Virus record (IMG/VR): IMGVR_UViG_3300031951_000003 | Coordinates: 124,001-188,000 of that record | Length of the DNA stretch: 64,000 nucleotides | Strand: one strand, 5' to 3' | Shown: positions 1,442 through 38,220 of the stretch, in pieces | Layout: every line of letters begins with the position of its first letter | Position numbering within the stretch: the stretch's first letter is position 1 | The notes under the pieces: generated by a model | What the model saw: only the letters and a program-made list of their open reading frames with translations | Database searches by the model: none | Told to the model about the DNA's origin: nothing | Made by a program: the position numbers and the translations under genes

Positions 1442-1834
1442 GGGGAAGTCATGGCAATTGATTGGCGTGTGTAGTTATAGGTGGCACGTAGGAGCTGAGT
1501 TAACTCCTTTATCAACTGATTTGAAAAAACAAATGGCAATACTTTTGCTAAGATGGCTGCTATCGGTTTAATCGCTGAAGAAGCTACTGTTGTTGCTTAA
1601 TTTAAGTCACGACACTCGGGTCGGTTAGGACATTAACCTAGGAACAGAAGTCCAATATACGGGTCACAGGTCAGAGCTCGTTTAAAATAATTCTGAGACC
1701 AAGTTGTTTGTAGGTGGGTTTCTCACATATATCAAACCTAATATTTCGGAACATTGAGAAACAATGTTGTAATAAACGTGTAGTCACTTATAGTTGTCGC
1801 GAACAAGACACGGGTTCGACTCCCGTCTTCTCCA
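1442..1834 (+). ncRNA. ssrA: tmRNA; tag reading frame 1535-1600 (A)GNTFAKMAAIGLIAEEATVVA*
   Basis: Acceptor GGGGAAG/CTTCTCC-A with G3.U70; T-arm GACACGGGTTCGACTCCCGTC; internal Ala-rich tag ORF. Confidence 0.93.
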
Positions 1835-1843
1835 CAGCAGATT

Positions 1844-2059: not shown

Positions 2060-5000
2060 ATGAAAAAAGCAATCTTGATGTCACTTTTAACCTTATTCGT
2101 GACAATCACATCTTTCGGGCAGATTACAACTTCTTCCCTGTCAGGTGTAGTTAAAAATGAAAAAGGTGAGACTTTGGTAGGTGCTACAGTTCATGCGGTA
2201 CACCAACCAACAGGTTCAGAATACCGTGCAACCACAAACAAAACGGGTGTCTACTCAATTCCGGCTGTACGTGTAGGAGGACCTTATCTTATTCACGTTA
2301 GTTACGTAGGCTACAGAAAAGCTGAACTAACTGACATCAACACTCTTCTTGGGGTTACAAGTAATGTTGACGTAACTCTTATTTCTGAATCAAAAGAGTT
2401 GAAAGAAGTTACTATTGTTGGAACGAGAAACAATTTATTCTCAAAAGACAAAACAGGGGCAGCTCAACAATTCGGACGTAGAGAACTAACTACAATTCCA
2501 ATTACGGGTGCAAGAACAATTGACGGAATTACCAAATACAATCCTTTTGGTGATGGTCGTTCTTTTGGAGCACAGGATTCTCGATTGAATAATTTTACAA
2601 TCGACGGTTCTCAGTTCAACAACAACTTCGGTTTGGGTTCATCAGCGGCTGCTGGTGGTAGAACAGGTGCTTCAGCAATTTCTTTGGATGCGATTGACCA
2701 ATTACAGGTGAACGTCGCTCCTTTTGACATTCGTCAAAGTGGTTTCGTGGGTGCAGGTATTAACGCTGTTACTCGTTCTGGAACTAACGAAATTGAAGGA
2801 AGTGTTTATCAAACACAAAGAAACAATTCAAAAACTTATGTGGGAGACAACGCTAGAGGAACTACAGTAACTGCTCAGAAATTTGATGAAAAAGTTTTCG
2901 GTTTTAGATTGGGTGCACCAATCATCAAAAATAAATTATTCATTTTTGGAAACTATGAAAGCATCGTTAGAACTGAACCAGGCACAACTTGGATTTCTAC
3001 CGGTTCTCCTTTGACAGGTTCACAAGTAAGTCGTGTTAAATACGATGACATGGTGAGACTTTCGAAGTTCATGAGAGATACTTTAGGTTATGAAACAGGT
3101 CCTTTTGAAGGTTATTCTAACACAAACGATTCAAGAAAATTCATGACTCGTTTGGATTGGAACATTAGTCCAAAACACAAGTTAATGGCACGTTTTGTTA
3201 ATCACAACTCATCCGCTGAGATTAACATTTCTAACTCTCAGTCAGCGGGTGCTGGAAACAGAACTACTCAATTCAACGCAATGAGTTTCCAAAACAGTGG
3301 ATACATTATTATGGATAATACTCGTTCAGGTGTATTAGAATTGAATTCTAAGTTTTCAAACACACTCCACAACAATTTGATTATCTCTTATGACAAACAA
3401 ATTGAAGACAGAGCTTACATGAGTCAAATGTTCCCAACAATTGACATCAGAGAAGGTTCAGCAACTTACACTTCTGTAGGTTTTGACCCATTCACACCAG
3501 GAAATAAATTGAACTATTGGACATTCAACGTTACTAACAACGTTACAAAATATTTGGAAAAACACACTTTGGTGGGTGGTTTCAACTATCAAATGTACCA
3601 ATCAAACAATTTATTCTTCCCAGCTTCGAACGGTGTATATATTTTCAACAGTTTGAATGACTTCTACACTGCAGCTAAACAATCAGTTGCTAATAATGGA
3701 GGACCTTCAGCTTTCGCACCAGCGAGATTTCAGTTTCGTTATTCTGCTTTACCTGGAGCGGTTGAACCAATGCAGGTATTGGAAGCTAATCGTTTAGACC
3801 TTTATGTTCAAGACGAGTATAACCTTACTAAGAATTTAAAATTAACAACGGGATTGAGAGCGAACGTAATTTCACTTGGAAATACAGCTCTTGAAAATCC
3901 TGCAATCACATCAATGACATTTGGTGGTGGTGAAAAATTAAACACGAGCGTGATGCCGAAAACACAATTGTTATTCGAACCACGTTTCGGTTTCAACTAT
4001 GATTTAAAAGGTGAAAAGAAAACTCAAATTAGAGGTGGTACAGGTATTTTCACAGGTAGACCTCCATTTGTTTTCTTATCAAACCAAATCGGAAATAACG
4101 GTGTATTAACAGGATTTATCGATGTATCAGGTGCTCAAGCATCACAATACGGATTTACTACAAATCCTAATCAATATTTTATTCCTCAAACACCAACATT
4201 ACCTTCAACTTTTGATTTAGCTTTCACTGACGCAAATTACAAGTTCCCTCAAGTATGGAGAAGTAATTTAGCAATCGACCAAAAACTACCTTGGTTGGGT
4301 TTAGTGGCAAGTGCTGAAGTTCTTTACAATAAGACAATAAACGCAGTTCATTACTACAACGCAAACCAAGATGTTCCTGTAGGAACTTTAGGTGGTCCTG
4401 ACAAAAGAGCATTGTTTGCAAATACTGACCCTGGTGTTAGAGTAAATGATAATGTTTCTATGGCAGCAGTTTTAACAAACAAACAAGGTGCTTACAACAA
4501 GTCTCTTACATTGAAATTAGAAAAACCAATTTCGAAAGGAGTTTGGGGTTATGCAGCTTGGACTACATCAAGAGCTGAAGATTACATGAGTGCTGGTTCA
4601 ATCGCGAGTGGTTCATGGCAATCAGCTCGTTCTATCAACGGAAACAACGATTTACAACTTTCTACTTCAGACTTTGTTGTTAGGAATAGAATCGTAGGTT
4701 TATTAGGTTATAGATTTGATTATGGTAAGAAATACGGTGGAGCAACTACAATCACTATTGGTTACGTAGGTGCTCAAAATAACCCATTCTCTTACACTGT
4801 AGCGGGTGACCTTAACGGTGATAGAGTTAGAGACAACGAACTTATGTTTGTACCTGTAAATGGTTCTGACATTCGTTTCTCAACTTTAACAGTAGGTACA
4901 AGAACTTATACAGAAGCTGAACAACAAGCGGCTTTCGAATCATTTATTTCTCAAGATGACTACCTTTCTACAAGAAGAGGTCAGTACGCTGAAAGAAACG

Positions 5001-10888: not shown

Positions 10889-10989
10889 TTTCTTTTTGTT
10901 TTTTTTGTTAATGTTTTAATAACGTCTTGAGTTTATAAATATAGAAAAGTTTTTCAGAATCGTCAATTAGCAGTGTAAACTTTTTTTTG

Positions 10990-11074
10990 CGGAGAGTATT
11001 GGATTCGAACCAATAGGCCAATTGCTCGACCACAGTTTAGCAAACTGCTCCTTTAACCACTCAGGCAACTCTCC
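10990..11074 (-). tRNA. tRNA-Ser(GCT)
   Basis: Cloverleaf with long variable arm; anticodon loop TTGCTAA. Confidence 0.93.
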
Positions 11075-11078
11075 TTTG

Positions 11079-11152
11079 TGTGAACGATGGGGTTCGAACC
11101 CACGACAACTAGCGCCACAAGCTAGTGCTCTTCCAACTGAGCTACGTTCACC
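11079..11152 (-). tRNA. tRNA-His(GTG)
   Basis: Cloverleaf; loop TTGTGGC; encoded G-1. Confidence 0.92.
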
Positions 11153-11164
11153 ATATTACTTACG

Positions 11165-11237
11165 AGGTCTTACTAGGATTCGAACCCAAATTTCTTCGTC
11201 CGTAGCGAAGTGTATTCATCCATTATACGATAAGACC
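11165..11237 (-). tRNA. tRNA-Arg(ACG)
   Basis: Cloverleaf; loop CTACGGA. Confidence 0.9.
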
Positions 11238-11320
11238 TATCTGTTATTTTCTTCTAAACATTTCGGACAAAGTCCGTCTTTGTCTAAAAGTGTTCCGTGA
11301 ATTCCACAAATATTATTCAT
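11237..11320 (-). CDS. 27-aa zinc-finger microprotein within the tRNA array
   Basis: MNNICGIHGTLLDKDGLCPKCLEENNR; CxxH...CxxC. Confidence 0.55.
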   Translation of the reverse strand: MNNICGIHGTLLDKDGLCPKCLEENNR

Positions 11321-11332
11321 AATAAAAATTTG

Positions 11333-11403
11333 TTATCCCCCAAGGATTCGAACCTTGAATAATTGGACCAAAACCAATTGTGTTACCGTTACACCAGAGG
11401 ATA
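11333..11403 (-). tRNA. tRNA-Gln(TTG)
   Basis: Cloverleaf; loop TTTTGGT. Confidence 0.9.
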
Positions 11404-11408
11404 TAATG

Positions 11409-11482
11409 TGGACCCTCACGGACTTGAACCGTGGACCTACTGATTATGAGTCAGCCGCTCTAACCAACTGAGCTAAGGGTCC
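11409..11482 (-). tRNA. tRNA with CAT anticodon, most likely Ile2 (lysidine type)
   Basis: GGACCCTTAGCTCAG...GACTCATAATC resembles Ile2 rather than initiator Met. Confidence 0.85.
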
Positions 11483-11549
11483 TTAAATGATTGTTACACT
11501 TGGTTGTGTTACTTCCTCCTGACACCACTCAGGACTTCAATCATTTTTG

Positions 11550-11631
11550 TGGGAGTAGCTGGACTCGAACCAACGAACTCGAAAGAGGGAAGATTTACAG
11601 TCTTCTGCCATTGCCACTAGGCGATACTCCC
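11550..11631 (-). tRNA. tRNA-Tyr(GTA)
   Basis: Cloverleaf with variable arm; loop CTGTAAA. Confidence 0.93.
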
Positions 11632-11635
11632 ATTA

Positions 11636-11768
11636 AGGAAAGGAGAAGATGGTTGCGTGGACATCTCCTTTTACGATTGGCATTACTCAGGTGTATTTCT
11701 CCCAACTCCGATGATACAGACCGAAATACACTCTCGAGTCATTAGTATCACCATTCCCCAATCAACCT
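11636..11768 (-). ncRNA. Candidate pseudoknotted ncRNA between tRNA-Trp and tRNA-Tyr
   Basis: Nested GATTGG/CCAATC, ACTC/GAGT, GTGTATTTC/GAAATACAC; second hairpin AAAGGAG-ATG/CAT-CTCCTTT; crossing pairs GGTGATAC/GTATCATC and GGTTG/CAACC. Confidence 0.6.
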
Positions 11769-11773
11769 ATTTG

Positions 11774-11846
11774 CACGCACGGTAGGACTCGAACCTACAA
11801 CACCTAGTTTTGGAGACTAGTACTCTACCAATTGAGCTACGCACGC
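11774..11846 (-). tRNA. tRNA-Trp(CCA)
   Basis: Cloverleaf; loop CTCCAAA. Confidence 0.92.
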
Positions 11847-11851
11847 GTGAC

Positions 11852-12400
11852 TTATTTTTTCGTCCATTTACTTTTAGAGAGTAAGTCATCCCAATCTTCA
11901 TATCCTTGTTCACGAGCATACTCATCGTTTTTTTTCCGAGTATATTCTTTCACTTTATCGGGGTCTCTCATTTCATCGGAATCTTTGAAACCTAATGATT
12001 TCGCACATTCCTCTTCACACCAGTTGTGAGAACCTATCTCTATGTTTATTGGTAAGTCAGTTTCCAAGGATTCGATAAAATCTTCGAATTGACTTGCCGA
12101 TTCATAAGGCATTGTGTAGATTCCTTCATGAACCTGATATCCACTTTCATTTTTACTGTCGAAAACCTCGATTCTACCCATTCTGTATTTTTCACCCATG
12201 AGTGAAAATACACCATATCCCACAGTTGAATAACTGAATCTACCACGAGTGCTTACACCTAACATATCAACACATCTTGGATTTGCCTCCATGTAATGCG
12301 CTAAGTGGTCAACAAGCATCTCATCACTTAGTTCTTTTCCTTCTTGTTTTCTTCGGATGTTATTCAGGAACCATAACAAATCCGCTCTATTGATTTTCAT
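11852..12400 (-). CDS. Hypothetical protein
   Basis: 182-aa ORF; TATCTTTG upstream (12416-12423). Confidence 0.7.
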   Translation of the reverse strand: MKINRADLLWFLNNIRRKQEGKELSDEMLVDHLAHYMEANPRCVDMLGVSTRGRFSYSTVGYGVFSLMGEKYRMGRIEVFDSKNESGYQVHEGIYTMPYESASQFEDFIESLETDLPINIEIGSHNWCEEECAKSLGFKDSDEMRDPDKVKEYTRKKNDEYAREQGYEDWDDLLSKSKWTKK

Positions 12401-12428
12401 AATTTTTTATTTATACAAAGATAACGAA

Positions 12429-12953
12429 TTATCTCTCAAGTTTTTTTATACATTCATCTATTTTATCTCTTAATCTACCACCATACCCGAAGTCACCATC
12501 TACCTGAACGTGTCTCCACATCGGAACTCTTGGTTTCATCCATTTATATTGACCATCAAGTTTCATGTCGTCGATTGAAATCCAATTTGAGATTTTATTA
12601 TCTTTTACCCACTTTGTGATTTCTGCTGCTCTTTCCCACTCAATTGAAGGTCTACTAAGTTTATTCCAAAGGTCCTGATGGGTTGTGATATCTACAATCG
12701 GAGCTGTTACACCATAGTATTGGAAAATACGTTTTAATTGTATAAAACTGAAATGTTTTCTCCAATCCGAACTCACAACTAAACTTGCGTTTGTTTCATC
12801 ACAAATTTTTTGAAGTGCTTGACAATCATCTTCAACCCATGGGTAAGGGATTGTAAAAGTTTTACTGTGTTCGTTCAGCGTAACTCTCCCATCACCCCAA
12901 GTTCCCCATGCCAGTGGTCCATCTACATCAATAAAAATAATTTTACGTCTCAT
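12429..12953 (-). CDS. HAD-domain protein of the Swiss-army-knife RNA-repair type (HAD_SAK_2-like)
   Basis: IIFIDVDGPL, VVSSDWR, WISIDD motifs. Confidence 0.75.
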   Translation of the reverse strand: MRRKIIFIDVDGPLAWGTWGDGRVTLNEHSKTFTIPYPWVEDDCQALQKICDETNASLVVSSDWRKHFSFIQLKRIFQYYGVTAPIVDITTHQDLWNKLSRPSIEWERAAEITKWVKDNKISNWISIDDMKLDGQYKWMKPRVPMWRHVQVDGDFGYGGRLRDKIDECIKKLER

Positions 12954-12967
12954 AACAATTTTATTTG

Positions 12968-13041
12968 TTGGAATGGGCGGATTCGAACCGCCGACATCTA
13001 ACGTATCAGATTAGCACTCTAACCAACTGAGTTACATTCCA
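12968..13041 (-). tRNA. tRNA-Ile(GAT)
   Basis: Cloverleaf; loop CTGATAC. Confidence 0.92.
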
Positions 13042-13047
13042 TTATTG

Positions 13048-13119
13048 AGGTCAGGATAGGAATCGAACCTACGTAGAAAGTTTTGCAGACTTCCGCCTAA
13101 GCCACTCGGCCACCCGACC
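13048..13119 (-). tRNA. tRNA-Cys(GCA)
   Basis: Cloverleaf; loop CTGCAAA; U73. Confidence 0.93.
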
Positions 13120-13126
13120 TTAATTG

Positions 13127-13198
13127 TGACCCCTGATGGATTCGAACCATCGACTTCTTCATTAAAAGTGAAGAGCTCTTCCACTGAGCTAAGAGGTC
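13127..13198 (-). tRNA. tRNA-Lys(TTT)
   Basis: Cloverleaf; loop CTTTTAA. Confidence 0.92.
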
Positions 13199-13202
13199 TT
13201 TG

Positions 13203-13275
13203 TGGTAACGGTCAGAATCGAACTGACCACACCTTGGTCTTCAGCCAAGTGCTCTACCAACTGAGCTACGTCACC
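13203..13275 (-). tRNA. tRNA-Phe(GAA)
   Basis: Cloverleaf; loop CTGAAGA. Confidence 0.92.
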
Positions 13276-13280
13276 ATTTG

Positions 13281-13353
13281 TAGTCCCTGTAGGAATCGAA
13301 CCTACGACACCTTGCATGTAAGGCAAGTGCTCTTCCAACTGAGCTAAGAGACT
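13281..13353 (-). tRNA. tRNA-Val(TAC)
   Basis: Cloverleaf; loop CTTACAT. Confidence 0.93.
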
Positions 13354-13360
13354 GAATTTG

Positions 13361-13432
13361 TAGCCCCGCACGGACTCGAACCGAAATCTCCACCGTGAAA
13401 GGGTGGCGTCCTAACCTTTAGACGACGGGGCC
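13361..13432 (-). tRNA. tRNA-Glu(TTC)
   Basis: Cloverleaf; loop CTTTCAC. Confidence 0.92.
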
Positions 13433-13457
13433 AAGAATTACAAACTTACAACCATTA

Positions 13458-13468
13458 TTTCAAAGAAC
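13458..13468 (-). promoter_or_regulatory. boxA-like antitermination element GTTCTTTGAAA
   Basis: Same word upstream of tmRNA; resembles rrn boxA. Confidence 0.5.
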
Positions 13469-13483
13469 CAAAAACTCCTTAAA

Positions 13484-13522
13484 TAAAAAAACCCCGAACT
13501 TCATTTCTGTAGTCCGAGGTTT
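13484..13522 (-). terminator. Attenuator terminator upstream of Glu..Ser tRNA block
   Basis: AAACCTCGGACT/AGTTCGGGGTTT + T run; 5' arm GGACTACAG can pair instead with CTGTAGTCT in the leader ORF. Confidence 0.85.
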
Positions 13523-13555
13523 GTATATATAACTCTTCAGGAATTATAGGCTATC

Positions 13556-13636
13556 TCATGAGACTACAGCGCGTGTCTTAAACCAACAAATCTCTTGTTG
13601 TTTACTATAGACTTTATTACGCACTATTGTTCTCAT
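13556..13636 (-). CDS. Leader peptide 1, MRTIVRNKVYSKQQEICWFKTRAVVS
   Basis: Follows TATATTTG (13654-13661); 3' end carries the antiterminator strand; codons match the downstream tRNAs. Confidence 0.75.
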   Translation of the reverse strand: MRTIVRNKVYSKQQEICWFKTRAVVS

Positions 13637-13695
13637 TATTATTATAATTACTACAAATATAGTAAATCTCTTTTAAAAATCAAATTATTTTTCTG

Positions 13696-13776
13696 TACCC
13701 CAAGAGAGACTCGAACTCTCACGACCGAAGTCATTGGTTCCTAAGACCAACGCGGCTACCATTACGCCATCGGGGT
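13696..13776 (-). tRNA. tRNA-Leu(TAG)
   Basis: Cloverleaf with variable arm; loop CTTAGGA. Confidence 0.92.
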
Positions 13777-13779
13777 ATT

Positions 13780-13995
13780 TTAGTGAGTTCCGTTTGTTAG
13801 AGAAACTCCGTGTTCAAACCCTTTTATGAAATCATTTATTTCTTCTTGGGTCATACTATTATAAACTCTCCCAACAACAAATCCAATTTCATTACCTAAA
13901 TCAGAAATATCGCCGATATAATTAATTTCTTTTTTGTGGTTATCAAATTCATTTAGAATTTTTTCCAAGATTGTATATGTAAACGCTCTAGTCAT
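13780..13995 (-). CDS. Hypothetical protein
   Basis: Start moved to MTRAFTY to avoid overlap with tRNA-Arg. Confidence 0.55.
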   Translation of the reverse strand: MTRAFTYTILEKILNEFDNHKKEINYIGDISDLGNEIGFVVGRVYNSMTQEEINDFIKGFEHGVSLTNGTH

Positions 13996-14007
13996 TTTTT
14001 TAAGTTG

Positions 14008-14079
14008 TAGTCCCGCCAAGAATCGAACTTGGAATTACTGCTTAGAAGGCAGTAGTTATATCCATTTAACTACAGGACC
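14008..14079 (-). tRNA. tRNA-Arg(TCT)
   Basis: Cloverleaf; loop CTTCTAA. Confidence 0.92.
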
Positions 14080-14083
14080 AAAG

Positions 14084-14170
14084 TACCTCAGGTGGGACTT
14101 GAACCCACACGGACATTTTCTGTCCACAAGATTTTAAGTCTTGCGCGTATACCGATTTCGCCACCAAGGT
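14084..14170 (-). tRNA. tRNA-Leu(TAA)
   Basis: Cloverleaf with variable arm; loop CTTAAAA. Confidence 0.93.
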
Positions 14171-14212
14171 ATAAAACAAAAGTAAGGAATCAGTATTGAA
14201 AAAACAAATGAA

Positions 14213-14917
14213 TTAGAACTTTTCTTCCCAAACAGTATCTCTTTCTGTTTCTTCAATATTCATTGTGTGATTTAAGGTTATCTCTTTACGGTCCAAATCA
14301 ATTTCGAAATTACCTTGAGAACCTTCGTTGATTTCCCATCCACCAAAATTATTTTCAAGCATTCTGTATGCGTAGTCTGAAACCACCGCAGGAACAGAAT
14401 CACCATTTGTAAAATCGTCTTCCAAGTAACCAGAGTCACCACTTCCATTGTAGTCAAGTTGAAGGACTCTATCACTAATTTCCTCGTCGTTTTCTAACGT
14501 ATCAAAAAGCTCCATTAAATCCTCATTGTCGTCTTCTTCCAAAGAATGAGTAATAGATTCGGTATTCCCAACATCATAGTAGCTATAGTCATAGGAGATT
14601 GAAATTTCTCTAGTTTTACAATCAATCTCAATCATAACTCTTCCCCAATTGATATCGTCATATTCGGGTTGTTTAATTAGTTCATTTTCACAAACATAAT
14701 AAATGCTTTTCTGAAAAATTGGAATTAATCCTTCAGGAATTTCCGCAACGTAATTATTTGAAAAATGTGTTACATTTTTCCAATCGATATCGTCACAATC
14801 AAAATAAGAGGTATTCATTTCGAATTCGACAAATGCATCTTCCATTCCGATGGAACCTAAATAACGACAGATACGATTTAAATACTTTTTTTCGTCTTTA
14901 GTTAATAAATCTTTCAT
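14213..14917 (-). CDS. DUF6878-like protein
   Basis: YNGSGDSG...GWEINEGSQG C-terminal motif. Confidence 0.6.
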   Translation of the reverse strand: MKDLLTKDEKKYLNRICRYLGSIGMEDAFVEFEMNTSYFDCDDIDWKNVTHFSNNYVAEIPEGLIPIFQKSIYYVCENELIKQPEYDDINWGRVMIEIDCKTREISISYDYSYYDVGNTESITHSLEEDDNEDLMELFDTLENDEEISDRVLQLDYNGSGDSGYLEDDFTNGDSVPAVVSDYAYRMLENNFGGWEINEGSQGNFEIDLDRKEITLNHTMNIEETERDTVWEEKF

Positions 14918-14930
14918 GATAATATAAATA

Positions 14931-15284
14931 TCAATCTTCGAACTCTAATTTTATTGTTTTCAACATCCAAGATGGCCTTGTGTTCGATACCATGTTGTTT
15001 ATCCATTCTTTTGCGGAAGGGATATAATTATTACAATCTTCCTTTACGTGTTGTTCACCAACATATCGGGTGTAGACTGTCTTACCATCACTGTTTTTGA
15101 ATTCAGGACCAAACCTCTTTTCCATTTCGAAAATCCCTTCCGAATGATGTCTAAACATTCTGTGTAAAGAATCCCCGAACCAACCTTTGGTCTCATCCAT
15201 CCACTCATGTAAATGAATATAATCCTCAGGTTTTCCACCAAACTTTTTAGCGGAACTTTTTGCATGTAAATTAGGGTGTGACAT
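14931..15284 (-). CDS. DUF6915-like protein
   Basis: MSHPNLHAKSSAKKFGGKPEDY..H.WMDETK..HRMFRHHSEGIF..EQHVKED; start reassigned. Confidence 0.7.
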   Translation of the reverse strand: MSHPNLHAKSSAKKFGGKPEDYIHLHEWMDETKGWFGDSLHRMFRHHSEGIFEMEKRFGPEFKNSDGKTVYTRYVGEQHVKEDCNNYIPSAKEWINNMVSNTRPSWMLKTIKLEFED

Positions 15285-15870
15285 TTCTCCAAGATTCTTT
15301 TCGATAACCAAATAAATGAAATTGCTCCTCAAAAATTTTATAAACGTAGTTGGATACTTCTTCATCATAAAATTCCTTCCATGGTTTCCTTTTTTCATTC
15401 ATTTGTCCTTCAAATTCTGTTTTGAATTTGTTATTACTTATGAACTCATCAAAGGTTTTCTTGATATCGGAATTCTCCAAATCCAAAAATTTCAAAGACT
15501 TGAGGTCATTCTCCAAATTTTCCTGTTTTATGAATTTATCAAATGGTCTACCCAAAATTTCATAATTTTTATGATATTGTAATTGATAATCATTAATTAT
15601 TTTCGGGTTTTCGAGGGATTCGAAAACCCAAGTTTTGAAATGTTTTTGAAAATCATTCAAATGATGTGAATACAAATAAAACAGGGATACTAGTCTAGAG
15701 TAAGGGTTTCTAACGTTTGATACGAAGAAATAGTCTTTTTTGTTGGAATCAAATGTAAAATGATGGTCAAAAGTTTGAAAACCCATAACACGAAGAAGTT
15801 CTTTAGTTGAACGTGTTCCTGTTCTTTGTGGGGTAAACCAATAAACTTTGTGTTTCTCTGAGATATGCAT
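15271..15870 (-). CDS. Sulfotransferase family 2-like protein
   Basis: PQRTGTRS and VRNPYSRLVS motifs; paralog of 7533-8153. Confidence 0.75.
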   Translation of the reverse strand: MHISEKHKVYWFTPQRTGTRSTKELLRVMGFQTFDHHFTFDSNKKDYFFVSNVRNPYSRLVSLFYLYSHHLNDFQKHFKTWVFESLENPKIINDYQLQYHKNYEILGRPFDKFIKQENLENDLKSLKFLDLENSDIKKTFDEFISNNKFKTEFEGQMNEKRKPWKEFYDEEVSNYVYKIFEEQFHLFGYRKESWRNVTP

Positions 15871-16103
15871 TAGTAAATTTTTGTGTTGTTTCTTCTTGCC
15901 TCTTCCGCTTCCTTATAGATACGTATCCAAGTTAGAGTAATATCAACAGGTGCTAACACCCAACACATGATAATCAAACCTAAAGTATCTAATCCAGGTG
16001 AGATACCAAGACCACCTGCCATAACATCTCTGTTCCATTTTCTTACTGACATGACAAGACAATAAGCCAAACAGATTAAATAATAAGACCAAAAAATTTC
16101 CAT
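15870..16103 (-). CDS. Small membrane protein
   Basis: Two hydrophobic segments; abuts the next gene. Confidence 0.55.
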   Translation of the reverse strand: MEIFWSYYLICLAYCLVMSVRKWNRDVMAGGLGISPGLDTLGLIIMCWVLAPVDITLTWIRIYKEAEEARRNNTKIY

Positions 16104-16119
16104 AACTTTCAAATTTTAG

Positions 16120-16192
16120 TGGAGAATGAGGGAGTCGAACCCACGACAACTTGAATGCAAATCAAGTGCTCTACCAACTGAGCTAATTCCCC
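16120..16192 (-). tRNA. tRNA-Ala(TGC)
   Basis: G3.U70; loop TTTGCAT. Confidence 0.93.
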
Positions 16193-16198
16193 TATTTG

Positions 16199-16271
16199 AG
16201 CCTCCTGTCGGAATCGAACCAACGACCTACTGATTACAAATCAGTTGCTCTACCTGCTGAGCTAAGGAGGC
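16199..16271 (-). tRNA. tRNA-Thr(TGT)
   Basis: Cloverleaf; loop TTTGTAA. Confidence 0.93.
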
Positions 16272-16277
16272 GATGTG

Positions 16278-16350
16278 AGCGGAAGACCAGGCTCGAACTG
16301 GCCACCCCGACCTTGGCAAGGTCGTGCTCTACCGAATGAGCTACTTCCGC
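16278..16350 (-). tRNA. tRNA-Gly(GCC)
   Basis: Cloverleaf; loop TTGCCAA. Confidence 0.94.
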
Positions 16351-16359
16351 AATTTTCTG

Positions 16360-16432
16360 AGCGGGAGACCAGGCTCGAACTGGCCACCTATAGCTTGGAA
16401 GGCTATCGCTCTACCAAATGAGCTACTCCCGC
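16360..16432 (-). tRNA. tRNA-Gly(TCC)
   Basis: Cloverleaf; loop CTTCCAA. Confidence 0.94.
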
Positions 16433-16436
16433 ATAT

Positions 16437-16538
16437 TCCGTTTTTCCTTCACATTTAGCCCAATCACCAGTGAAACAATGATTGGATTTTGGATGGAGAA
16501 GTCTGCAAGGATTTCTCCCATTAGACCGTTACCACGGA
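16437..16538 (-). ncRNA. Candidate structured RNA between tRNA-Asp and tRNA-Gly
   Basis: Closing TCCGT/ACGGA; internal GGAGAA/TTCTCC and CCAATCA/TGATTGG. Confidence 0.4.
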
Positions 16539-16551
16539 CAAACTCTACCAG

Positions 16552-16625
16552 CGGAACGGACGGGGCTCGAACCCGCGACCTCTTGCGTGACAGGCAAGCA
16601 TTCTAGCCAACTGAACTACCGCTCC
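16552..16625 (-). tRNA. tRNA-Asp(GTC)
   Basis: Cloverleaf; loop CTGTCAC. Confidence 0.94.
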
Positions 16626-16630
16626 ATTTG

Positions 16631-16817
16631 AACAGGTTTTTTGTGTCCTTTTACACATCATGACCAACATATTACTACATTGGTGGTTACATTTTCGTCT
16701 TTGGTTAATTACTCCTGACTTATAGTAAACACTACCCTCACCGCTCTGATACCGCGAATCAAGACGGCGTCTTTGGGATTCATATACCGTGGGGTTCCAC
16801 CACAGTCTTCACCTGTT
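16631..16817 (-). ncRNA. Candidate ~190-nt multi-stem ncRNA between tRNA-Asn and tRNA-Asp
   Basis: Ends pair AACAGGT/ACCTGTT; stems CTGTGG/CCACGG, CGTCTT/AAGACG, CCAA/TTGG, TGTGT/ACACA. Confidence 0.5.
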
Positions 16818-16820
16818 TTG

Positions 16821-16892
16821 CGTCCTCTCATGGGCTCGAACCATGGACCCTCTCGTTAACAGCGAGATGCTCTACCGCTGAGCTAAGAAGAC
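16821..16892 (-). tRNA. tRNA-Asn(GTT)
   Basis: Cloverleaf; loop CTGTTAA. Confidence 0.93.
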
Positions 16893-16898
16893 GTTTTG

Positions 16899-16972
16899 TT
16901 GGGAAGACAGGATTCGAACCTGCGGCCCCCTGGTCCCAAACCAGGTGCTCTACCGGGCTGAGCCACTTCCCA
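16899..16972 (-). tRNA. tRNA-Pro(TGG)
   Basis: Cloverleaf; loop TTTGGGA. Confidence 0.93.
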
Positions 16973-32967: not shown

Positions 32968-33176
32968 AAGAACTTGATTTACATGGTCTCACAAATCTTG
33001 AGGCTCGAGACAAAGTTGAAAATTTTGTTTTACTTTATTCTACTGAATTACCAATTAGAATTATTACAGGAGGTTCGGAAAGAATGAGAAACATGACCGT
33101 AAACATTCTCCAAAAACATAAATTTACTTATGACATACCCGCACATAACACAGGTGAAATAATCGTTTTATCATGA
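32955..33176 (+). CDS. Stand-alone Smr (small MutS-related) domain protein
   Basis: ELDLHG...EA...IRIITG...N.G. Confidence 0.8.
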   Translation: MGKIKELDLHGLTNLEARDKVENFVLLYSTELPIRIITGGSERMRNMTVNILQKHKFTYDIPAHNTGEIIVLS

Positions 33177-34267
33177 ACAATTTGGACAAACAATATCAAC
33201 AACTTTTACAAGACATAATTGATTATGGCGTAGAAAAAACTGATAGGACCGGCACAGGTACCAAATCAATCTTTGGTTATACCATTCGACATAACATGAA
33301 GGATGGTTTTCCACTCCTGACCACAAAAAAAATGGCTTGGAAAACAATGGTTACGGAGTTACTATGGTTTTTAAGGGGAGACACCAATATCAAATTTCTT
33401 GTAGATAACAATTGTCATATTTGGGATGGAGATGCATATAAAAACTATTTGAAGGTCACCAAACGTGAATTCGAATTGAATTCGTCGATGTCGAGTCATC
33501 CTCATTTCAATTTGAAAACCAAAGAGGATTTCATTGATAAAATTAAAACCGATAAGAAGTTTGCAAAAGAATATGGTGAACTAGGACCAATCTACGGTAA
33601 GCAATGGAGACAATGGCAAGGATGGATGACTTATGATGAGAATAAAAAGGGCTCGTTGTGGTTTGACCAAATTTCAAGAGCAATTCAACTTTTGAAAACC
33701 GACCCCGACAGTAGGAGAATAATGGTTTCTGCGTGGAACGTGGCAGAAATTGATGAAATGGTTCTACCCCCATGTCATTATGGATTTCAAGTTTATACGA
33801 GAGAGTTGAGTCATCAAGAAAGAAGTGATTTAAAAAATTCTCCACCTTTTAATTATGGCAAACCAGCAAATGGTAAATTAATTGATAAGAGATTATTAGA
33901 TAGTTGTAATGTACCAACCCGAGCAATCTCTTTAATGTGGAATCAACGCTCAGTTGATACTTTCTTAGGCTTGCCCTTCAATATTGCATCTTACGGTTTA
34001 CTACTGACTTTGTTCGGCAAACTTTTAAACATGGTCCCAGAACAGTTAATTGGAAATTTGGGTGATACACATCTTTATATGAATCATTTAGACCAAGCAA
34101 TAGAGCAAAAGTCGAGACAATCCTACGAGCTTCCTTGGGTTAATTTAAATTTCGAGTTCCAATATAGAGATGGTTATTTAGTGGACTGGAACAAAATACG
34201 TGTAACTGATATCGAATTGATGAATTACCTTTCAGCTCCACCAATCAAAGCCCCTCTGAGTAATTAA
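33173..34267 (+). CDS. thyA: Thymidylate synthase
   Basis: DRTGTGT, ELLWFLRG, LGPIYGKQWR, SRRIMVSAWN, LPPCH, QRSVD.FLGLPFNIASY. Confidence 0.97.
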   Translation: MNNLDKQYQQLLQDIIDYGVEKTDRTGTGTKSIFGYTIRHNMKDGFPLLTTKKMAWKTMVTELLWFLRGDTNIKFLVDNNCHIWDGDAYKNYLKVTKREFELNSSMSSHPHFNLKTKEDFIDKIKTDKKFAKEYGELGPIYGKQWRQWQGWMTYDENKKGSLWFDQISRAIQLLKTDPDSRRIMVSAWNVAEIDEMVLPPCHYGFQVYTRELSHQERSDLKNSPPFNYGKPANGKLIDKRLLDSCNVPTRAISLMWNQRSVDTFLGLPFNIASYGLLLTLFGKLLNMVPEQLIGNLGDTHLYMNHLDQAIEQKSRQSYELPWVNLNFEFQYRDGYLVDWNKIRVTDIELMNYLSAPPIKAPLSN

Positions 34268-37394: not shown

Positions 37395-37482
37395 GGAAAG
37401 ATGGCAGAGCTGGTCGATTGCACCTGACTTGAAATCAGGAGAACGGGGAACTGTTCCGTGGGTTCGAATCCTACTCTTTCCG
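37395..37482 (+). tRNA. tRNA-Ser(TGA)
   Basis: Cloverleaf with long variable arm; loop CTTGAAA. Confidence 0.93.
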
Positions 37483-37487
37483 CACTT

Positions 37488-37645
37488 TGTAAGGTGGTGA
37501 AACGTCCCGCGGACTTGGCATACACACCCCCTCGTCTCGGGGGCGCTGAATTTGAGATAGGTGTTGGATATGGGTTGACCACAAAGCGCGCTAAATGTGT
37601 CCACCACCGAATCACAGCATGAAGGTTCGAATCCTTCCCTTACAG
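37488..37645 (+). ncRNA. Aberrant tRNA-like RNA (158 nt) with D-loop hairpin and giant variable arm
   Basis: Acceptor TGTAAGG/CCTTACA; T-arm GAAGG-TTCGAAT-CCTTC; anticodon-like arm CCCCC-TCGTCTC-GGGGG. Confidence 0.7.
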
Positions 37646-37647
37646 CA

Positions 37648-38220
37648 ATGGTTCATATAAAAAATAATTTTATCGATGAAACAGAAAATAACTTCCTGTT
37701 TTCCTTTCTTAATGAAAAAACCAACAAATCTTTTTCCACTGAGGAAAATTTTTATGAATGGTATGAAATTTCTAAAGATGATGATATTTTCAACTCTCCA
37801 CTTTTTTTGAGAATCTTCAACAGAAATCTTTTTTTTGTAAGAAATTCATATGGCACAAATTTAAAATTACATTACTGTGGATTTGCGAATCAAACAAGAG
37901 GTTTCGATTATCACGCAGATTCAGTTTGGCCAGAAATCCCTGAAAATAGAGTCATGGGTCTTCCATCCAAAGAAAATAACACATATTCAAACTATCAAGG
38001 AAATTGGATACCGAATTATGTTCCGAATAGAAAATACACTACTGTCTTATATCTGAACGAAGGTTTTGATGGTGGTGAAACTCATTTCCCTGTTTTAGAC
38101 ATTTTAGTTAAACCTGAAAAAAATAAAATTCTTGGATTTGGTTGCGATGAGAAATTTGTTCATGGTGTTATGCCAACCACAAATGGGGTGAGAAAAGCGT
38201 TTATCTGCTGGTTTGAATAA
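37648..38220 (+). CDS. 2OG-Fe(II) oxygenase (prolyl-hydroxylase-like)
   Basis: YHAD, RKYTTVLYLN..F.GGET.F, HGV.P...G.R. Confidence 0.82.
   Translation: MVHIKNNFIDETENNFLFSFLNEKTNKSFSTEENFYEWYEISKDDDIFNSPLFLRIFNRNLFFVRNSYGTNLKLHYCGFANQTRGFDYHADSVWPEIPENRVMGLPSKENNTYSNYQGNWIPNYVPNRKYTTVLYLNEGFDGGETHFPVLDILVKPEKNKILGFGCDEKFVHGVMPTTNGVRKAFICWFE

What the first reader, a model, noticed from the sequence alone, without database searches (positions are those of the whole stretch)
37488..37645. 158-nt tRNA mimic with non-canonical anticodon loop and ~75-nt variable arm
Seen: perfect acceptor and T arms, a Leu-like D arm with an inserted GUCC/GGAC hairpin, and loop UCGUCUC lacking U33 and purine 37. 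The huge variable domain is closed by GCUG/CAGC. It directly follows tRNA-Ser. Inference: not a decoding tRNA; possibly a decoy for anticodon nucleases or synthetases, or a Y-RNA-like scaffold.
Basis: partly seen in the sequence, partly recalled or inferred. Interest (0 to 1): 0.65.

Follow-up and report, generated by a model that had tools for sequence, protein, structure and literature searches.

The report
Giant Asp-type tRNA-like RNA family
The 158-nt element is a real member of a widespread, apparently undescribed family of oversized tRNA-like RNAs shared by Bacteroidota bacteria and their phages; it carries the marks of an aspartate-accepting tRNA and, in bacteria, sits next to the asparagine regulator AsnC, which suggests a role in making asparagine rather than in ordinary decoding.

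Summary
Window 37488-37645 (+) folds as a tRNA cloverleaf with a 77-nt structured variable domain, 4 nt after tRNA-Ser(UGA). ARAGORN and Rfam miss it. It is neither chance nor a pseudogene. More than 120 viral contigs and about 80 Bacteroidota chromosomal loci carry homologues. 29 of 35 base pairs show compensatory changes, and 96% of cells are paired against 43-51% in slid controls. The body is tRNA-Leu-like. The anticodon loop is tRNA-Asp-like: G34-U35-C36 is kept in every confirmed member, C38 and U37 in nearly all. G73, G2-C71 and U1-A72 are near-invariant, C74 is always encoded, and CCA is often encoded in bacteria. These are the published Asp identity determinants plus the GatCAB determinant U1-A72. 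In 46 of 81 bacterial loci the RNA is transcribed divergently from an AsnC orthologue. The carrier lineages keep GatCAB despite having AsnRS and GlnRS, and Pedobacter heparinus lacks AsnA and AsnB. Best reading (inferred, about 0.35): an AspRS-charged, GatCAB-amidated, non-decoding carrier for asparagine synthesis, copied by phages. The decoy and Y-RNA readings are not supported. No description was found in Rfam or the literature searched.

The parts
37395..37483 (+). tRNA-Ser(UGA), 4 nt upstream of the element; probably the same transcript
   Evidence: ARAGORN and Rfam tRNA at 57.7 bits. A tRNA-Ser lies within 150 nt upstream in 26 of 110 distinct viral copies; no other tRNA type exceeds 2.
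37488..37645 (+). The whole tRNA-like RNA ('X'), from U1 to discriminator G73; C74 is encoded at 37646
   Evidence: Sequence. Covariance model R1 scores it at 146.5 bits (the window sequence was in the seed). Family alignment A1. C74 is encoded in 110 of 110 viral and 78 of 78 bacterial copies. All 24 ordinary tRNAs of the window also end N73-C.
37488..37494 (+). Acceptor stem, 5' strand (UGUAAGG); pairs with 37638-37644 (CCUUACA). U1-A72 and G2-C71 are near-invariant.
   Evidence: All 7 pairs covary and 100% of cells are paired. U1-A72 in 84 of 85 viral copies, G2-C71 in 83 of 85. In bacteria, 112 and 116 of 116 cells with letters.
37497..37525 (+). D arm. The 3-bp stem is G10-C25, U11-A24, G12-C23 (37497-37499 with 37523-37525). 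The Leu-like D loop AAA...UUGGCAUA carries the G18-G19 equivalents at 37517-37518.
   Evidence: Pairs 10-25 and 11-24 covary (GC/AU/UA and UA/CG). The sequence resembles the window's tRNA-Leu(UAA) D arm. tRNA-Leu(UAA) is the best-scoring ordinary tRNA with model R1, at 38.6 bits.
37504..37514 (+). Lineage-variable hairpin inserted in the D loop (GUCC-CGC-GGAC)
   Evidence: Absent in many relatives and replaced by other self-complementary inserts in others (alignment columns 16-45).
37527..37543 (+). Anticodon arm: 5-bp stem CCCCC/GGGGG and 7-nt loop UCGUCUC (37532-37538), with G34-U35-C36 at 37534-37536, U37 at 37537 and C38 at 37538
   Evidence: The stem covaries (for example CCCAC/GUGGG) and 100% of cells are paired. 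GUC is kept in members found without any constraint on the loop.
37544..37620 (+). 77-nt variable domain. It has a closing helix (37545-37548 with 37615-37618), a 2-bp mini-helix (37554-37555 with 37612-37613), a conserved non-Watson-Crick internal loop (GAGAUA / GAA), and a second helix (37560-37568 with 37600-37608).
   Evidence: The closing helix is 99.7% paired with 3 of 4 pairs covarying. The mini-helix has 2 of 2 covarying. The second helix has 8 of 9 covarying.
37569..37599 (+). Apical part of the variable domain: conserved AUAUGGGUUGACCAC (GACCAC at 37577-37582), a small variable hairpin (37585-37592), and a conserved UG
   Evidence: Conserved in the 5 variants found by the 3'-end search, which put no constraint on this motif. 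Replaced by a plain hairpin in the short bacterial paralogues. Reads GACAAC in L267.
37621..37637 (+). T arm: GAAGG / UUCGAAU / CCUUC
   Evidence: 100% of cells paired, 3 of 5 pairs covary.
37648..38220 (+). Next ORF, a 2OG-Fe(II) oxygenase-domain protein whose ATG is 3 nt after G73. Listed as context only; no link to the RNA is shown.
   Evidence: Pfam PF13640, E = 4.7e-9.

Best explanation
The element is a functional gene for a large tRNA-like RNA, called X here. It has a class-II, tRNA-Leu-type core, a tRNA-Asp-type anticodon loop and acceptor end, and a structured 77-nt variable domain. X belongs to a family that is chromosomal in Bacteroidota and has been copied into many of their phages.

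Proposed mechanism; every step below is inferred and none is shown:
1. X is cut out of a tRNA-type transcript, completed to CCA, and aspartylated by AspRS. AspRS would read G34-U35-C36, C38, G73 and G2-C71.
2. Because X has U1-A72, the Asp on it is amidated by GatCAB to Asn.
3. U37, the often non-U33 loop and the huge variable domain keep Asn-X away from Asp codons on the ribosome. X therefore acts as a reusable carrier on which asparagine is made and then released, or passed to a non-ribosomal acceptor.
4. In the bacteria, X would be switched on by AsnC when asparagine is scarce.
5. The phage copy, transcribed with tRNA-Ser, would raise the asparagine supply for an AT-rich, Asn-rich proteome independently of host control.
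For: Shown:
- The RNA is real and under structural selection.
- It has a tRNA-type 3' end. G73-C74 is encoded in 188 of 188 copies, and full CCA in 23 of 78 bacterial copies. The window's 24 ordinary tRNAs end the same way.
- G34-U35-C36 is kept in all members found without any loop constraint. Variants occur only at positions 33, 37 and 38.
- G73, G2-C71 and U1-A72 are near-invariant.
- 46 of 81 bacterial loci, covering Pedobacter, Chitinophaga, other Chitinophagales and Cytophagales, have a divergent gene at a median of 223 nt. Its best matches are specifically AsnC: NCBIfam NF008384 at 156-179 bits against about 70 bits for other Lrp-type models; PDB 2CG4 E. coli AsnC at 132 bits against 84 bits for the next; JGI names it 'regulator for asnA, asnC and gidA'. 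These proteins are 42-100% identical to one another.

From papers:
- Asp identity rests on G73, G34, U35, C36 and C38, with G2-C71 as a minor determinant (PMC9976931).
- Bacterial GatCAB amidation is promoted by U1-A72 and blocked by G1-C72 plus U20a (PMC9976931; PMC1635274).
- Pedobacter heparinus has no asnA or asnB but has gatCAB, asnS and glnS. Chitinophaga, Niastella, Haliscomenobacter, Dyadobacter and Emticicia also combine gatCAB with asnS and glnS. The listed Flavobacteriaceae-type and Bacteroidales genomes have no gatCAB (PMC4206432 Table S1).
- Among about 80 confirmed bacterial X loci, none with a listed title is named as Flavobacteriales; one is a 'Bacteroidaceae' MAG (titles were listed for only part of the loci).

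Established knowledge: in E. coli, asnC is transcribed divergently from asnA and activates it when asparagine is low.

Context: the window's predicted proteins contain 6.7% Asn.
Against: - No step of charging, amidation or release has been observed.
- AspRS approaches tRNA from the variable-region side (my recollection of the yeast AspRS-tRNA complex). A 77-nt arm could clash with it.
- The enlarged D loop, which carries a hairpin in the window, might act like the U20a antideterminant for GatCAB.
- G73 plus a long variable arm is also the SerRS recognition set (PMC7609411), and tRNA-Ser is the preferred upstream neighbour in phages.
- Chitinophaga has three asnB genes, so X is not confined to genomes without an Asn synthetase.
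- Saprospiraceae copies are not next to AsnC.
- The phage window encodes no GatCAB, AspRS or Asn synthetase.
- The link between X and GatCAB is only at genus or order level.
- No release mechanism for Asn is known.
Confidence: 0.35

Rival explanations
1. X is serylated by SerRS, which reads a long variable arm plus G73. It then acts as a special Ser carrier, either as a substrate for an on-tRNA conversion in the manner of tRNA-Sec or as a donor for a non-ribosomal reaction. Some other protein would read the conserved GUC loop.
For: Class-II body, G73 and G2-C71. [quoted passage not shown]
Against: SerRS ignores the anticodon, so this does not explain the near-absolute conservation of G34-U35-C36 and C38. 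It also leaves U1-A72 and the AsnC neighbour unexplained. The core is Leu-like, not Ser-like. From memory, E. coli Ser identity uses G1-C72, A3-U70 and C11-G24; X has U1-A72, U3-A70 and a variable 11-24 pair.
Confidence: 0.15
2. X is a specialised decoding tRNA-Asp isoacceptor. It would be charged with Asp and read GAC/GAU on the ribosome under particular conditions, perhaps with a dedicated factor that binds the variable domain, as SelB does for tRNA-Sec.
For: Complete Asp identity set. A standard 7/5 acceptor/T helix. U33 in about 95% of bacterial copies. It sits in phage tRNA clusters.
Against: A pyrimidine at position 37 is family-wide, and U33 is replaced by C or A in many phage copies, including the window's. 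The window and 22 other viral loci already carry a normal tRNA-Asp(GUC). No conserved candidate factor gene was found beside X in phages or bacteria. This reading gives no reason for the AsnC linkage or for U1-A72.
Confidence: 0.12
3. One reading: X is a decoy or sponge. It would soak up a host anticodon nuclease aimed at GUN anticodons, or it would titrate AspRS or the queuine-inserting enzyme.
For: The loop is a near copy of the tRNA-Asp loop (CUGUCAC in the window's tRNA-Asp, CUGUCUC in most X). The phage has an RNA-repair-type HAD_SAK_2 gene inside its tRNA array and a cREC_REC-domain gene elsewhere in the window. These hint at a contest over tRNAs.
Against: The same RNA is a conserved chromosomal gene, with a dedicated regulator, in free-living Bacteroidota. 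A decoy needs neither a conserved acceptor end with C74/CCA nor a conserved variable domain. No defence genes are conserved beside it.
Confidence: 0.1
4. X is a regulatory tRNA mimic that is not aminoacylated for transfer. Its charged or uncharged state, or its variable domain, would be sensed by a protein to report Asp or Asn status. Precedents are Y-RNA-like scaffolds and the B. cereus pseudo-tRNA.
For: The AsnC linkage. Conserved single-stranded motifs (GACCAC and the internal loop) that could bind a protein. A precedent exists for a non-translational pseudo-tRNA (PMC3399842).
Against: No partner gene is conserved nearby. The short paralogues lack the GACCAC part yet keep the acceptor end and the anticodon loop, so those two ends, which are the ends used for charging, are the constrained features.
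Confidence: 0.1
5. The variable domain is an intron that is spliced out to give an ordinary tRNA, or the locus is a decaying tRNA pseudogene.
For: Only the size of the insert, and the fact that tRNA finders miss the gene.
Against: Removing the domain would still leave the U37 loop. No intron family matches, and 77 nt is far below the size of self-splicing introns. The insert lies in the variable region and has covarying helices. A metatranscriptome contig of a relative keeps it, and no cut-out joint was seen. 29 to 31 of 35 pairs covary, which excludes decay.
Confidence: 0.03

Closest known systems
tRNA-Asp (bacterial)
   Same: Anticodon loop CUGUCNC with G34-U35-C36 and C38; G73; G2-C71. These are the published Asp identity determinants.
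   Different: X has U1-A72 instead of G1-C72 and U37 instead of a purine. It has a Leu-type D arm with a 3-bp stem and a variable domain of 45 to about 95 nt instead of 5 nt. tRNA models do not detect it.
tRNA-Asn as cofactor of the AspRS/GatCAB transamidation pathway
   Same: An Asp-accepting RNA with the U1-A72 pair that licenses GatCAB. It occurs in lineages that keep GatCAB although they have AsnRS and GlnRS.
   Different: The anticodon is GUC, not GUU, so the product could not be used faithfully in translation. The RNA is much larger. It is placed next to asnC. No experimental evidence exists.
Class-II tRNAs (tRNA-Leu, tRNA-Ser) and tRNA-Sec / allo-tRNAs
   Same: Long base-paired variable arm and a 3-bp D stem. 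The D-arm sequence is close to tRNA-Leu. G73 as in Ser and Sec.
   Different: The variable arm is several times longer and carries conserved internal and apical motifs. X has a 7/5 acceptor/T helix (not 8/5, 8/4 or 9/3), G73 rather than the A73 of tRNA-Leu, and an Asp-type anticodon loop.
Non-proteinogenic tRNAs and pseudo-tRNAs (S. aureus cell-wall tRNA-Gly; B. cereus tRNA-Other, PMC3399842)
   Same: tRNA-shaped RNAs that appear to be kept away from ribosomal decoding and serve another process.
   Different: Those are of normal tRNA size. X has a large extra domain, a different proposed amino acid and pathway, and copies in phages.
Bacterial Y RNA-like YrlA and the tRNA-like domain of tmRNA
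   Same: Large non-coding RNAs that contain a tRNA-like module; both also occur in phages (PMC4201824 listed; tmRNA at window 1442-1837).
   Different: In YrlA the termini form the Ro-binding stem and there is no anticodon arm. tmRNA has no anticodon arm but has an ORF and pseudoknots. X has a complete cloverleaf whose termini form the acceptor stem, and no ORF.

Membership tests
Canonical elongator tRNA | Cloverleaf with 7-bp acceptor stem, 5-bp T stem, GGUUCGAAUCC-type T loop, and a D loop with GG | tested here: met
   Sequence; covariation in every stem.
Canonical elongator tRNA | Recognised by general tRNA models (ARAGORN; Rfam RF00005 at 29 bits or more) | tested here: not met
   No call at 37488-37645. 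ARAGORN calls none of the family except one false 'tRNA-Glu' on a 3' half in L197.
Canonical elongator tRNA | U33 and a purine at position 37 in a 7-nt anticodon loop | tested here: not met
   The window loop is UCGUCUC (C33, U37). U37 is nearly family-wide; U33 is present in most relatives but not all.
Canonical elongator tRNA | Decodes a codon on the ribosome | not testable with these tools
   Needs EF-Tu or ribosome binding assays, or reporter assays.
tRNA-Asp identity (AspRS substrate) | G73, G34, U35, C36 and C38 (strong determinants) and G2-C71 (minor) | tested here: met
   Determinants from PMC9976931. All are present in the window. GUC is in every member found without a loop constraint; G73 in 112 of 115 and G2-C71 in 116 of 116 bacterial copies.
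tRNA-Asp identity (AspRS substrate) | G1-C72, strictly conserved in bacterial tRNA-Asp | tested here: not met
   U1-A72 in 84 of 85 viral and 112 of 116 bacterial copies.
tRNA-Asp identity (AspRS substrate) | Actually aspartylated | not testable with these tools
   Needs a biochemical assay.
Bacterial GatCAB substrate (tRNA-Asn/Gln type) | U1-A72 base pair | tested here: met
   Rule from PMC1635274 and PMC9976931; counts.
Bacterial GatCAB substrate (tRNA-Asn/Gln type) | No D-loop antideterminant (U20a) | tested here: inconclusive
   The D loop is enlarged and carries a hairpin in the window and in many phage copies. The effect on GatCAB is unknown.
Bacterial GatCAB substrate (tRNA-Asn/Gln type) | The organism encodes GatCAB | tested here: inconclusive
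   Literature table only: Pedobacter heparinus and Chitinophaga pinensis are gatCAB-positive. Not checked genome by genome; the host of this phage is unknown.
tRNA-Ser / SerRS substrate | Long variable arm plus G73 | tested here: met
   rule from PMC7609411.
tRNA-Ser / SerRS substrate | Ser-type acceptor and D-stem pairs (G1-C72, A3-U70, C11-G24 in E. coli; recalled from memory) | tested here: not met
   U1-A72 and U3-A70; pair 11-24 is U-A or C-G.
tRNA-Leu | Leu-type D arm and core | tested here: met
   The D arm is close to the window's tRNA-Leu(UAA), which is also the best ordinary tRNA for model R1.
tRNA-Leu | A73 discriminator and a Leu anticodon | tested here: not met
   G73 and GUC.
tmRNA | tRNA-like domain without an anticodon arm, plus a tag ORF and pseudoknots | tested here: not met
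   Not called as tmRNA. An anticodon arm is present and there is no ORF. The window has a separate tmRNA at 1442-1837.
YrlA / bacterial Y RNA | Termini form a Ro60-binding stem, and the gene lies next to rsr | tested here: not met
   The termini form an acceptor stem with G73-C74(CA). No Ro/TROVE family appears among the 25 (of 27) window Pfam families listed or the neighbours scanned.
Intron-containing tRNA (group I or other) | An insert that matches an intron family and is removed to give a normal tRNA | tested here: not met
   No Rfam intron match at E up to 10. The insert is in the variable region. No cut-out joint in the contigs laid on it. The loop would remain non-canonical after removal.

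The most novel reading that the evidence does not exclude
X is an RNA cofactor for amino-acid biosynthesis that works outside translation. It would be an AsnC-controlled, tRNA-derived carrier on which AspRS and GatCAB make asparagine for release as the free amino acid. In Bacteroidota that have AsnRS, GlnRS and GatCAB, and in some cases no AsnA or AsnB, it would take the genomic and regulatory place of asnA. Phages would carry their own copy to boost asparagine supply. This would explain why these bacteria keep GatCAB, and it would be the first dedicated non-decoding tRNA-like scaffold for making a standard amino acid.
Probability: 0.3. Interest if true: 0.9.

Novelty: new variant of a known kind. 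Interest (0 to 1): 0.8.

Why it matters
It is strongly structured and invisible to tRNA finders and to Rfam, so it goes unannotated in thousands of genomes.

Its features give a directly testable answer to an open question raised in PMC4206432: why bacteria that have both AsnRS and GlnRS keep GatCAB, and how genera such as Pedobacter, which lack AsnA and AsnB, make asparagine.

If the carrier model holds, it adds a new functional class of tRNA-derived RNA: a regulated metabolic cofactor kept off the ribosome. It would also add a new kind of phage auxiliary metabolic gene, one that is an RNA.

If the model fails, the family is still a new, large and well-defined non-coding RNA whose conserved variable domain needs explaining.

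Tried and rejected
- GenBank phage collection, blastn with the element and with a consensus-like relative: no match. A 2-kb query matched only through tRNA-Ser.
- Rfam at E up to 10 on the window copy and on a Pedobacter copy: nothing relevant.
- Pairing of GACCAC with the 5' GGUGGU: rejected, because positions 10-11 covary with 24-25 while GACCAC stays fixed.
- Pairing of the anticodon loop with GAGAU in the variable domain: present in the window but not conserved, since most relatives have GAAAU.
- Search for a conserved protein partner beside X in phages: the commonest neighbours are unannotated ORFs, an RNaseH-like PF04308 protein and a metallophosphatase. None is in more than 23 of 136 loci. 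The top 'ORF' cluster, 39 loci about 98 nt upstream on the same strand, may be an artefact of reading through the upstream tRNA region; this was not checked.
- Neighbours of X in Saprospiraceae and other loci without AsnC: GH113, dethiobiotin-synthase-like, Mg-chelatase-like, OmpH, epimerase. Nothing is related to Asn.
- Test of whether more distant AsnC-like proteins (45-52% identity) sit beside asnA: the six looked up lie in unrelated contexts or on short contigs, so this was uninformative. A weak model hit beside one of them (L344, 14.6 bits) does not look like X.
- Reads: only assembled contigs were available. One metatranscriptome contig of a relative covers 37505-37648. No ends, strand or expression level could be read, and the one 'joint' is a replacement by a relative's domain, not a deletion.
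- No complex or structure prediction was attempted, because the partner in question is an RNA.
Full report
**1. What is in the window**

Positions 37488-37645 (+) read as a cloverleaf. The parts are:
- Acceptor stem UGUAAGG/CCUUACA, followed by U8 and G9.
- A 3-bp D stem (GUG/CAC). Its D loop contains AAA, an inserted GUCC-CGC-GGAC hairpin, and UUGGCAUA.
- A26, then the anticodon stem CCCCC/GGGGG with the loop UCGUCUC.
- A 77-nt variable domain.
- The T arm GAAGG-UUCGAAU-CCUUC and the discriminator G.

tRNA-Ser(UGA) ends 4 nt upstream. ARAGORN finds 24 tRNAs and a tmRNA in the window but not this element. Rfam finds nothing here at gathering thresholds or at E up to 10. The single-sequence fold recovers the acceptor, anticodon and T stems and the closing helix of the variable domain, but it is not significantly more stable than shuffles (z = -1.25).

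**2. It belongs to a large family**

- An exact search with the last 25 nt found identical copies on viral contigs of about 320 kb, plus four diverged variants.
It hit the limit again in the species-representative genome collection. About 80 of those hits are true members, nearly all from Bacteroidota: Pedobacter, Chitinophaga and other Chitinophagales, Cytophagales such as Aquirufa, and Saprospiraceae. The GC-rich actinobacterial hits are chance matches.
- GenBank phages hold nothing similar.
- The window itself is a phage of a Bacteroidota host. It is 33% GC, carries a tRNA array and a tmRNA, and encodes a protein with a T9SS sorting domain.

**3. Structure**

I mapped a hand-drawn structure onto a MAFFT alignment of 85 distinct viral members. 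96.2% of cells form standard pairs, and 29 of 35 pairs have changes on both sides. No shuffle out of 500 reaches the observed values. Sliding the 3' partners by 1-3 columns drops pairing to 43-51%.

A covariance model built from these viral sequences alone recovered the bacterial members at 90-147 bits. On that alignment 91.9% of cells are paired and 31 of 35 pairs covary. This second alignment is fitted to the model, so the first figure is the cleaner one.

All seven helices are supported: acceptor, D, anticodon, T, the closing helix of the variable domain, a 2-bp mini-helix, and a 9-bp second helix. The D-loop hairpin is a variable insertion. It is absent in many members and replaced by other hairpins in others.

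**4. What is conserved, allowing for search bias**

The gapped pattern forces GTCTCG, GACCAC and the T loop, so their invariance in alignment A1 is partly by construction. Three searches put no constraint on the anticodon loop:
- The 3'-end search: 5 variants.
- A search anchored only on the D arm and T loop: 17 further members.
- The model search in bacterial loci: 35 distinct members that lack GACCAC.

In all of these G34-U35-C36 is kept. The only loop variants are CAGUCCC, CAGUCAC, UCGUCUA and CAGUCUC, that is, changes at positions 33, 37 and 38.

Most members have U33, including about 95% of bacterial ones. The window's subtype has C33. U37 is nearly universal. U1-A72, G2-C71 and G73 are near-invariant. 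C74 is encoded in 188 of 188 copies, and full CCA in 23 of 78 bacterial and 10 of 110 viral copies. The window's 24 ordinary tRNAs also end N73-C followed by A-rich sequence, so X shares their 3'-end signature.

The D arm resembles the window's tRNA-Leu(UAA), which is also the best-scoring ordinary tRNA for the model. The loop differs from the window's own tRNA-Asp loop, CUGUCAC, essentially at position 37.

**5. Paralogues**

Many bacterial loci carry a second, shorter form of 107-121 nt just upstream of X. [quoted passage not shown] A simple hairpin replaces the GACCAC-containing apex. Saprospiraceae and some other genomes have tandem arrays of up to five copies. The two 'business ends' of a tRNA and the base of the variable arm are therefore the constant features. 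The apex is an accessory.

**6. Context**

*Phages.* 26 of 110 distinct copies have a tRNA-Ser within 150 nt upstream (18 UGA, 8 GCU). No other tRNA type exceeds two. tRNA-Leu is the commonest downstream neighbour. No protein family is consistently adjacent.

*Bacteria.* 46 of 81 loci have a divergently transcribed gene of about 157 aa at a median distance of 223 nt. Several of the other loci lack enough upstream sequence to tell. This gene is specifically AsnC-like:
- NCBIfam AsnC model: 156-179 bits, against about 70 bits for other Lrp-type models, though below the equivalog cut-off of 227.
- Best solved structure: E. coli AsnC (2CG4), 132 bits against 84 bits for the next.
- JGI annotates close relatives as the regulator of asnA, asnC and gidA.

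The association spans proteins only 42% identical to each other, from Sphingobacteriales, Chitinophagales and Cytophagales. By eye, a Bacteroidota-type TAnnTTTG element lies upstream of the RNA in a Pedobacter and a Chitinophaga locus. This is weak evidence.

**7. Interpretation**

According to the identity review PMC9976931:
- Aspartate identity rests on G73, G34, U35, C36 and C38, with G2-C71 as a minor element. The anticodon determinants are strongest in bacteria.
- Amidation of Asp-tRNA by bacterial GatCAB is conferred by U1-A72. It is prevented by G1-C72 and U20a. This is also the result of PMC1635274.

X has every positive element of both sets. In E. coli, asnC is divergent from asnA and activates it when asparagine is low (established knowledge). 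In these Bacteroidota the slot opposite asnC is occupied by X.

The survey in PMC4206432 lists:
- Pedobacter heparinus and Solitalea: no asnA or asnB, but gatCAB, asnS and glnS.
- Chitinophaga, Niastella, Haliscomenobacter, Dyadobacter and Emticicia: gatCAB together with asnS and glnS.
- The listed Flavobacteriaceae-type genomes and the Bacteroidales: no gatCAB.

Among the confirmed bacterial loci whose titles were listed, none is named as Flavobacteriales and one is a 'Bacteroidaceae' MAG.

The most economical reading is that X is charged with Asp by AspRS and amidated by GatCAB. It would serve as a carrier for asparagine synthesis, and its U37 loop and huge variable domain would keep Asn-X from reading Asp codons. 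A phage with an AT-rich, Asn-rich proteome (6.7% Asn) would gain from its own unregulated copy. Every biochemical step is inference. I put the whole chain at about 0.35, and the narrower claim that X is a functional, aminoacylatable tRNA-like RNA of host origin at above 0.9.

**8. Problems and rivals**

- G73 plus a long variable arm is also what SerRS recognises (PMC7609411), and tRNA-Ser is the favoured upstream neighbour in phages. However, SerRS does not read the anticodon, so the conserved GUC/C38 would have no explanation.
- From memory, AspRS binds tRNA from the variable-region side, so the big arm might interfere.
- The enlarged D loop might hinder GatCAB.
- Chitinophaga has asnB genes.
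- Saprospiraceae copies are not beside asnC.
- The window encodes no GatCAB, AspRS or Asn synthetase.
- A decoy role is conceivable for phage copies, and the phage has an RNA-repair HAD_SAK_2 gene in its tRNA array. It does not explain the regulated chromosomal gene.
- Splicing and pseudogene readings are effectively excluded.

**9. Novelty**

Seven full-text searches found no description of such an RNA. A review of non-canonical tRNAs does not mention anything like it. Rfam 15 has no matching family. The nearest concepts are the tRNA-Asn cofactor of the transamidation pathway, class-II tRNAs and tRNA-Sec, non-proteinogenic tRNAs and the B. cereus pseudo-tRNA, YrlA, and the tRNA-like domain of tmRNA. 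X fails at least one defining feature of each. I class it as a new variant of a known kind (tRNA-derived non-coding RNA), with a substantial chance of a new functional class.

**10. Limits**

- Many members are related to one another (several Pedobacter species), so counts are not independent events.
- The GatCAB and Asn-synthetase data are from a 2014 table of one genome per genus.
- Expression evidence is one contig of a relative in one metatranscriptome.
- Statements marked 'from memory' were not checked against a source.

Noticed in passing
window 1442-1837 (+): Phage-encoded tmRNA (Rfam 76.4 bits) with the short predicted tag AEEATVVA*.
   Followed up: no
window 10989-16972 (-): Array of 23 tRNA genes covering nearly all amino acids. 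Every one, like tRNA-Ser at 37395-37483 and X, encodes N73-C and then A-rich sequence rather than a full CCA. Only one CAU-anticodon tRNA is present in the window.
   Followed up: partly
window 12432-12953 (-): ORF with a HAD_SAK_2 domain ('Swiss Army Knife' RNA-repair proteins), embedded in the tRNA array between tRNA-Trp and tRNA-Ile. A cREC_REC (cyclic-phosphate processing) domain protein is also somewhere in the window but was not localised.
   Followed up: partly
window, ORFs not localised: The phage window encodes a protein with a Por_Secre_tail (T9SS sorting) domain, which points to a Bacteroidota host. It also encodes PPK2, ClpP, thymidylate synthase (33173-34267), two carbamoyltransferases and two 2OG-Fe(II) oxygenases.
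   Followed up: no
L152:5197-5310 (+), L151:5234-5341 (+), L165:5095-5202 (+), L139:3384-3504 and 3611-3731 (+): Short paralogues of X (107-121 nt). They have the same acceptor end, D arm, GUCUC loop and T arm, but a plain hairpin replaces the GACCAC apex. In Pedobacter they lie between asnC and the long form.
   Followed up: partly
L215:3688-4630 (-), L153:6974-7744 (-), L128:3758-4451 (-), L212:6010-6436 (-): Tandem arrays of two to five near-identical copies of X in Saprospiraceae and other Bacteroidota MAGs, without an adjacent asnC.
   Followed up: partly
L004:9302-9471 (-), L012:2645-2814 (+), L015, L024, L120, L123, L124, L142: In one subset, the D-loop insertion is a 5-6-bp hairpin with a conserved 7-nt loop CUCAGUU. 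It looks like a second anticodon-type stem-loop (CAG with U at '37').
   Followed up: no
L264:7049-7209 (+): A different 161-nt tRNA-like sequence on a viral contig. It has a GGGGAUG/CAUCCCC acceptor stem, A73, a Leu-type D arm, a normal T arm and a long unrelated insert. No Rfam match.
   Followed up: partly
L127:3391-4098 (+) and 9 other Chitinophagales loci: The tRNA (m7G46) methyltransferase gene trmB lies about 120-270 nt downstream of X on the same strand. TrmB acts on the variable region of tRNAs.
   Followed up: no
L186:3706-3848 (-): A degenerate copy between two intact copies. It keeps the 5' half through the anticodon arm but has lost the T arm (35 bits), so it looks like a true pseudogene of the family.
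   Followed up: no
L197:3282-3367 (+): ARAGORN calls a 'tRNA-Glu(CUC)' on the 3' half of an X copy. This shows how the family can be mis-annotated.
   Followed up: no
L142:1998-2258 (-): A 3.6-kb contig binned as a Bacteroidetes MAG carries the phage subtype of X directly after a tRNA-Ser(UGA). It is probably a phage fragment.
   Followed up: no
L152:5100-5115 and L140:5195-5212: The motif TTAAAATATTTGCAA is shared by the asnC-X intergenic regions of a Pedobacter and a Chitinophaga locus. It could be a regulator-binding site or a promoter element.
   Followed up: no
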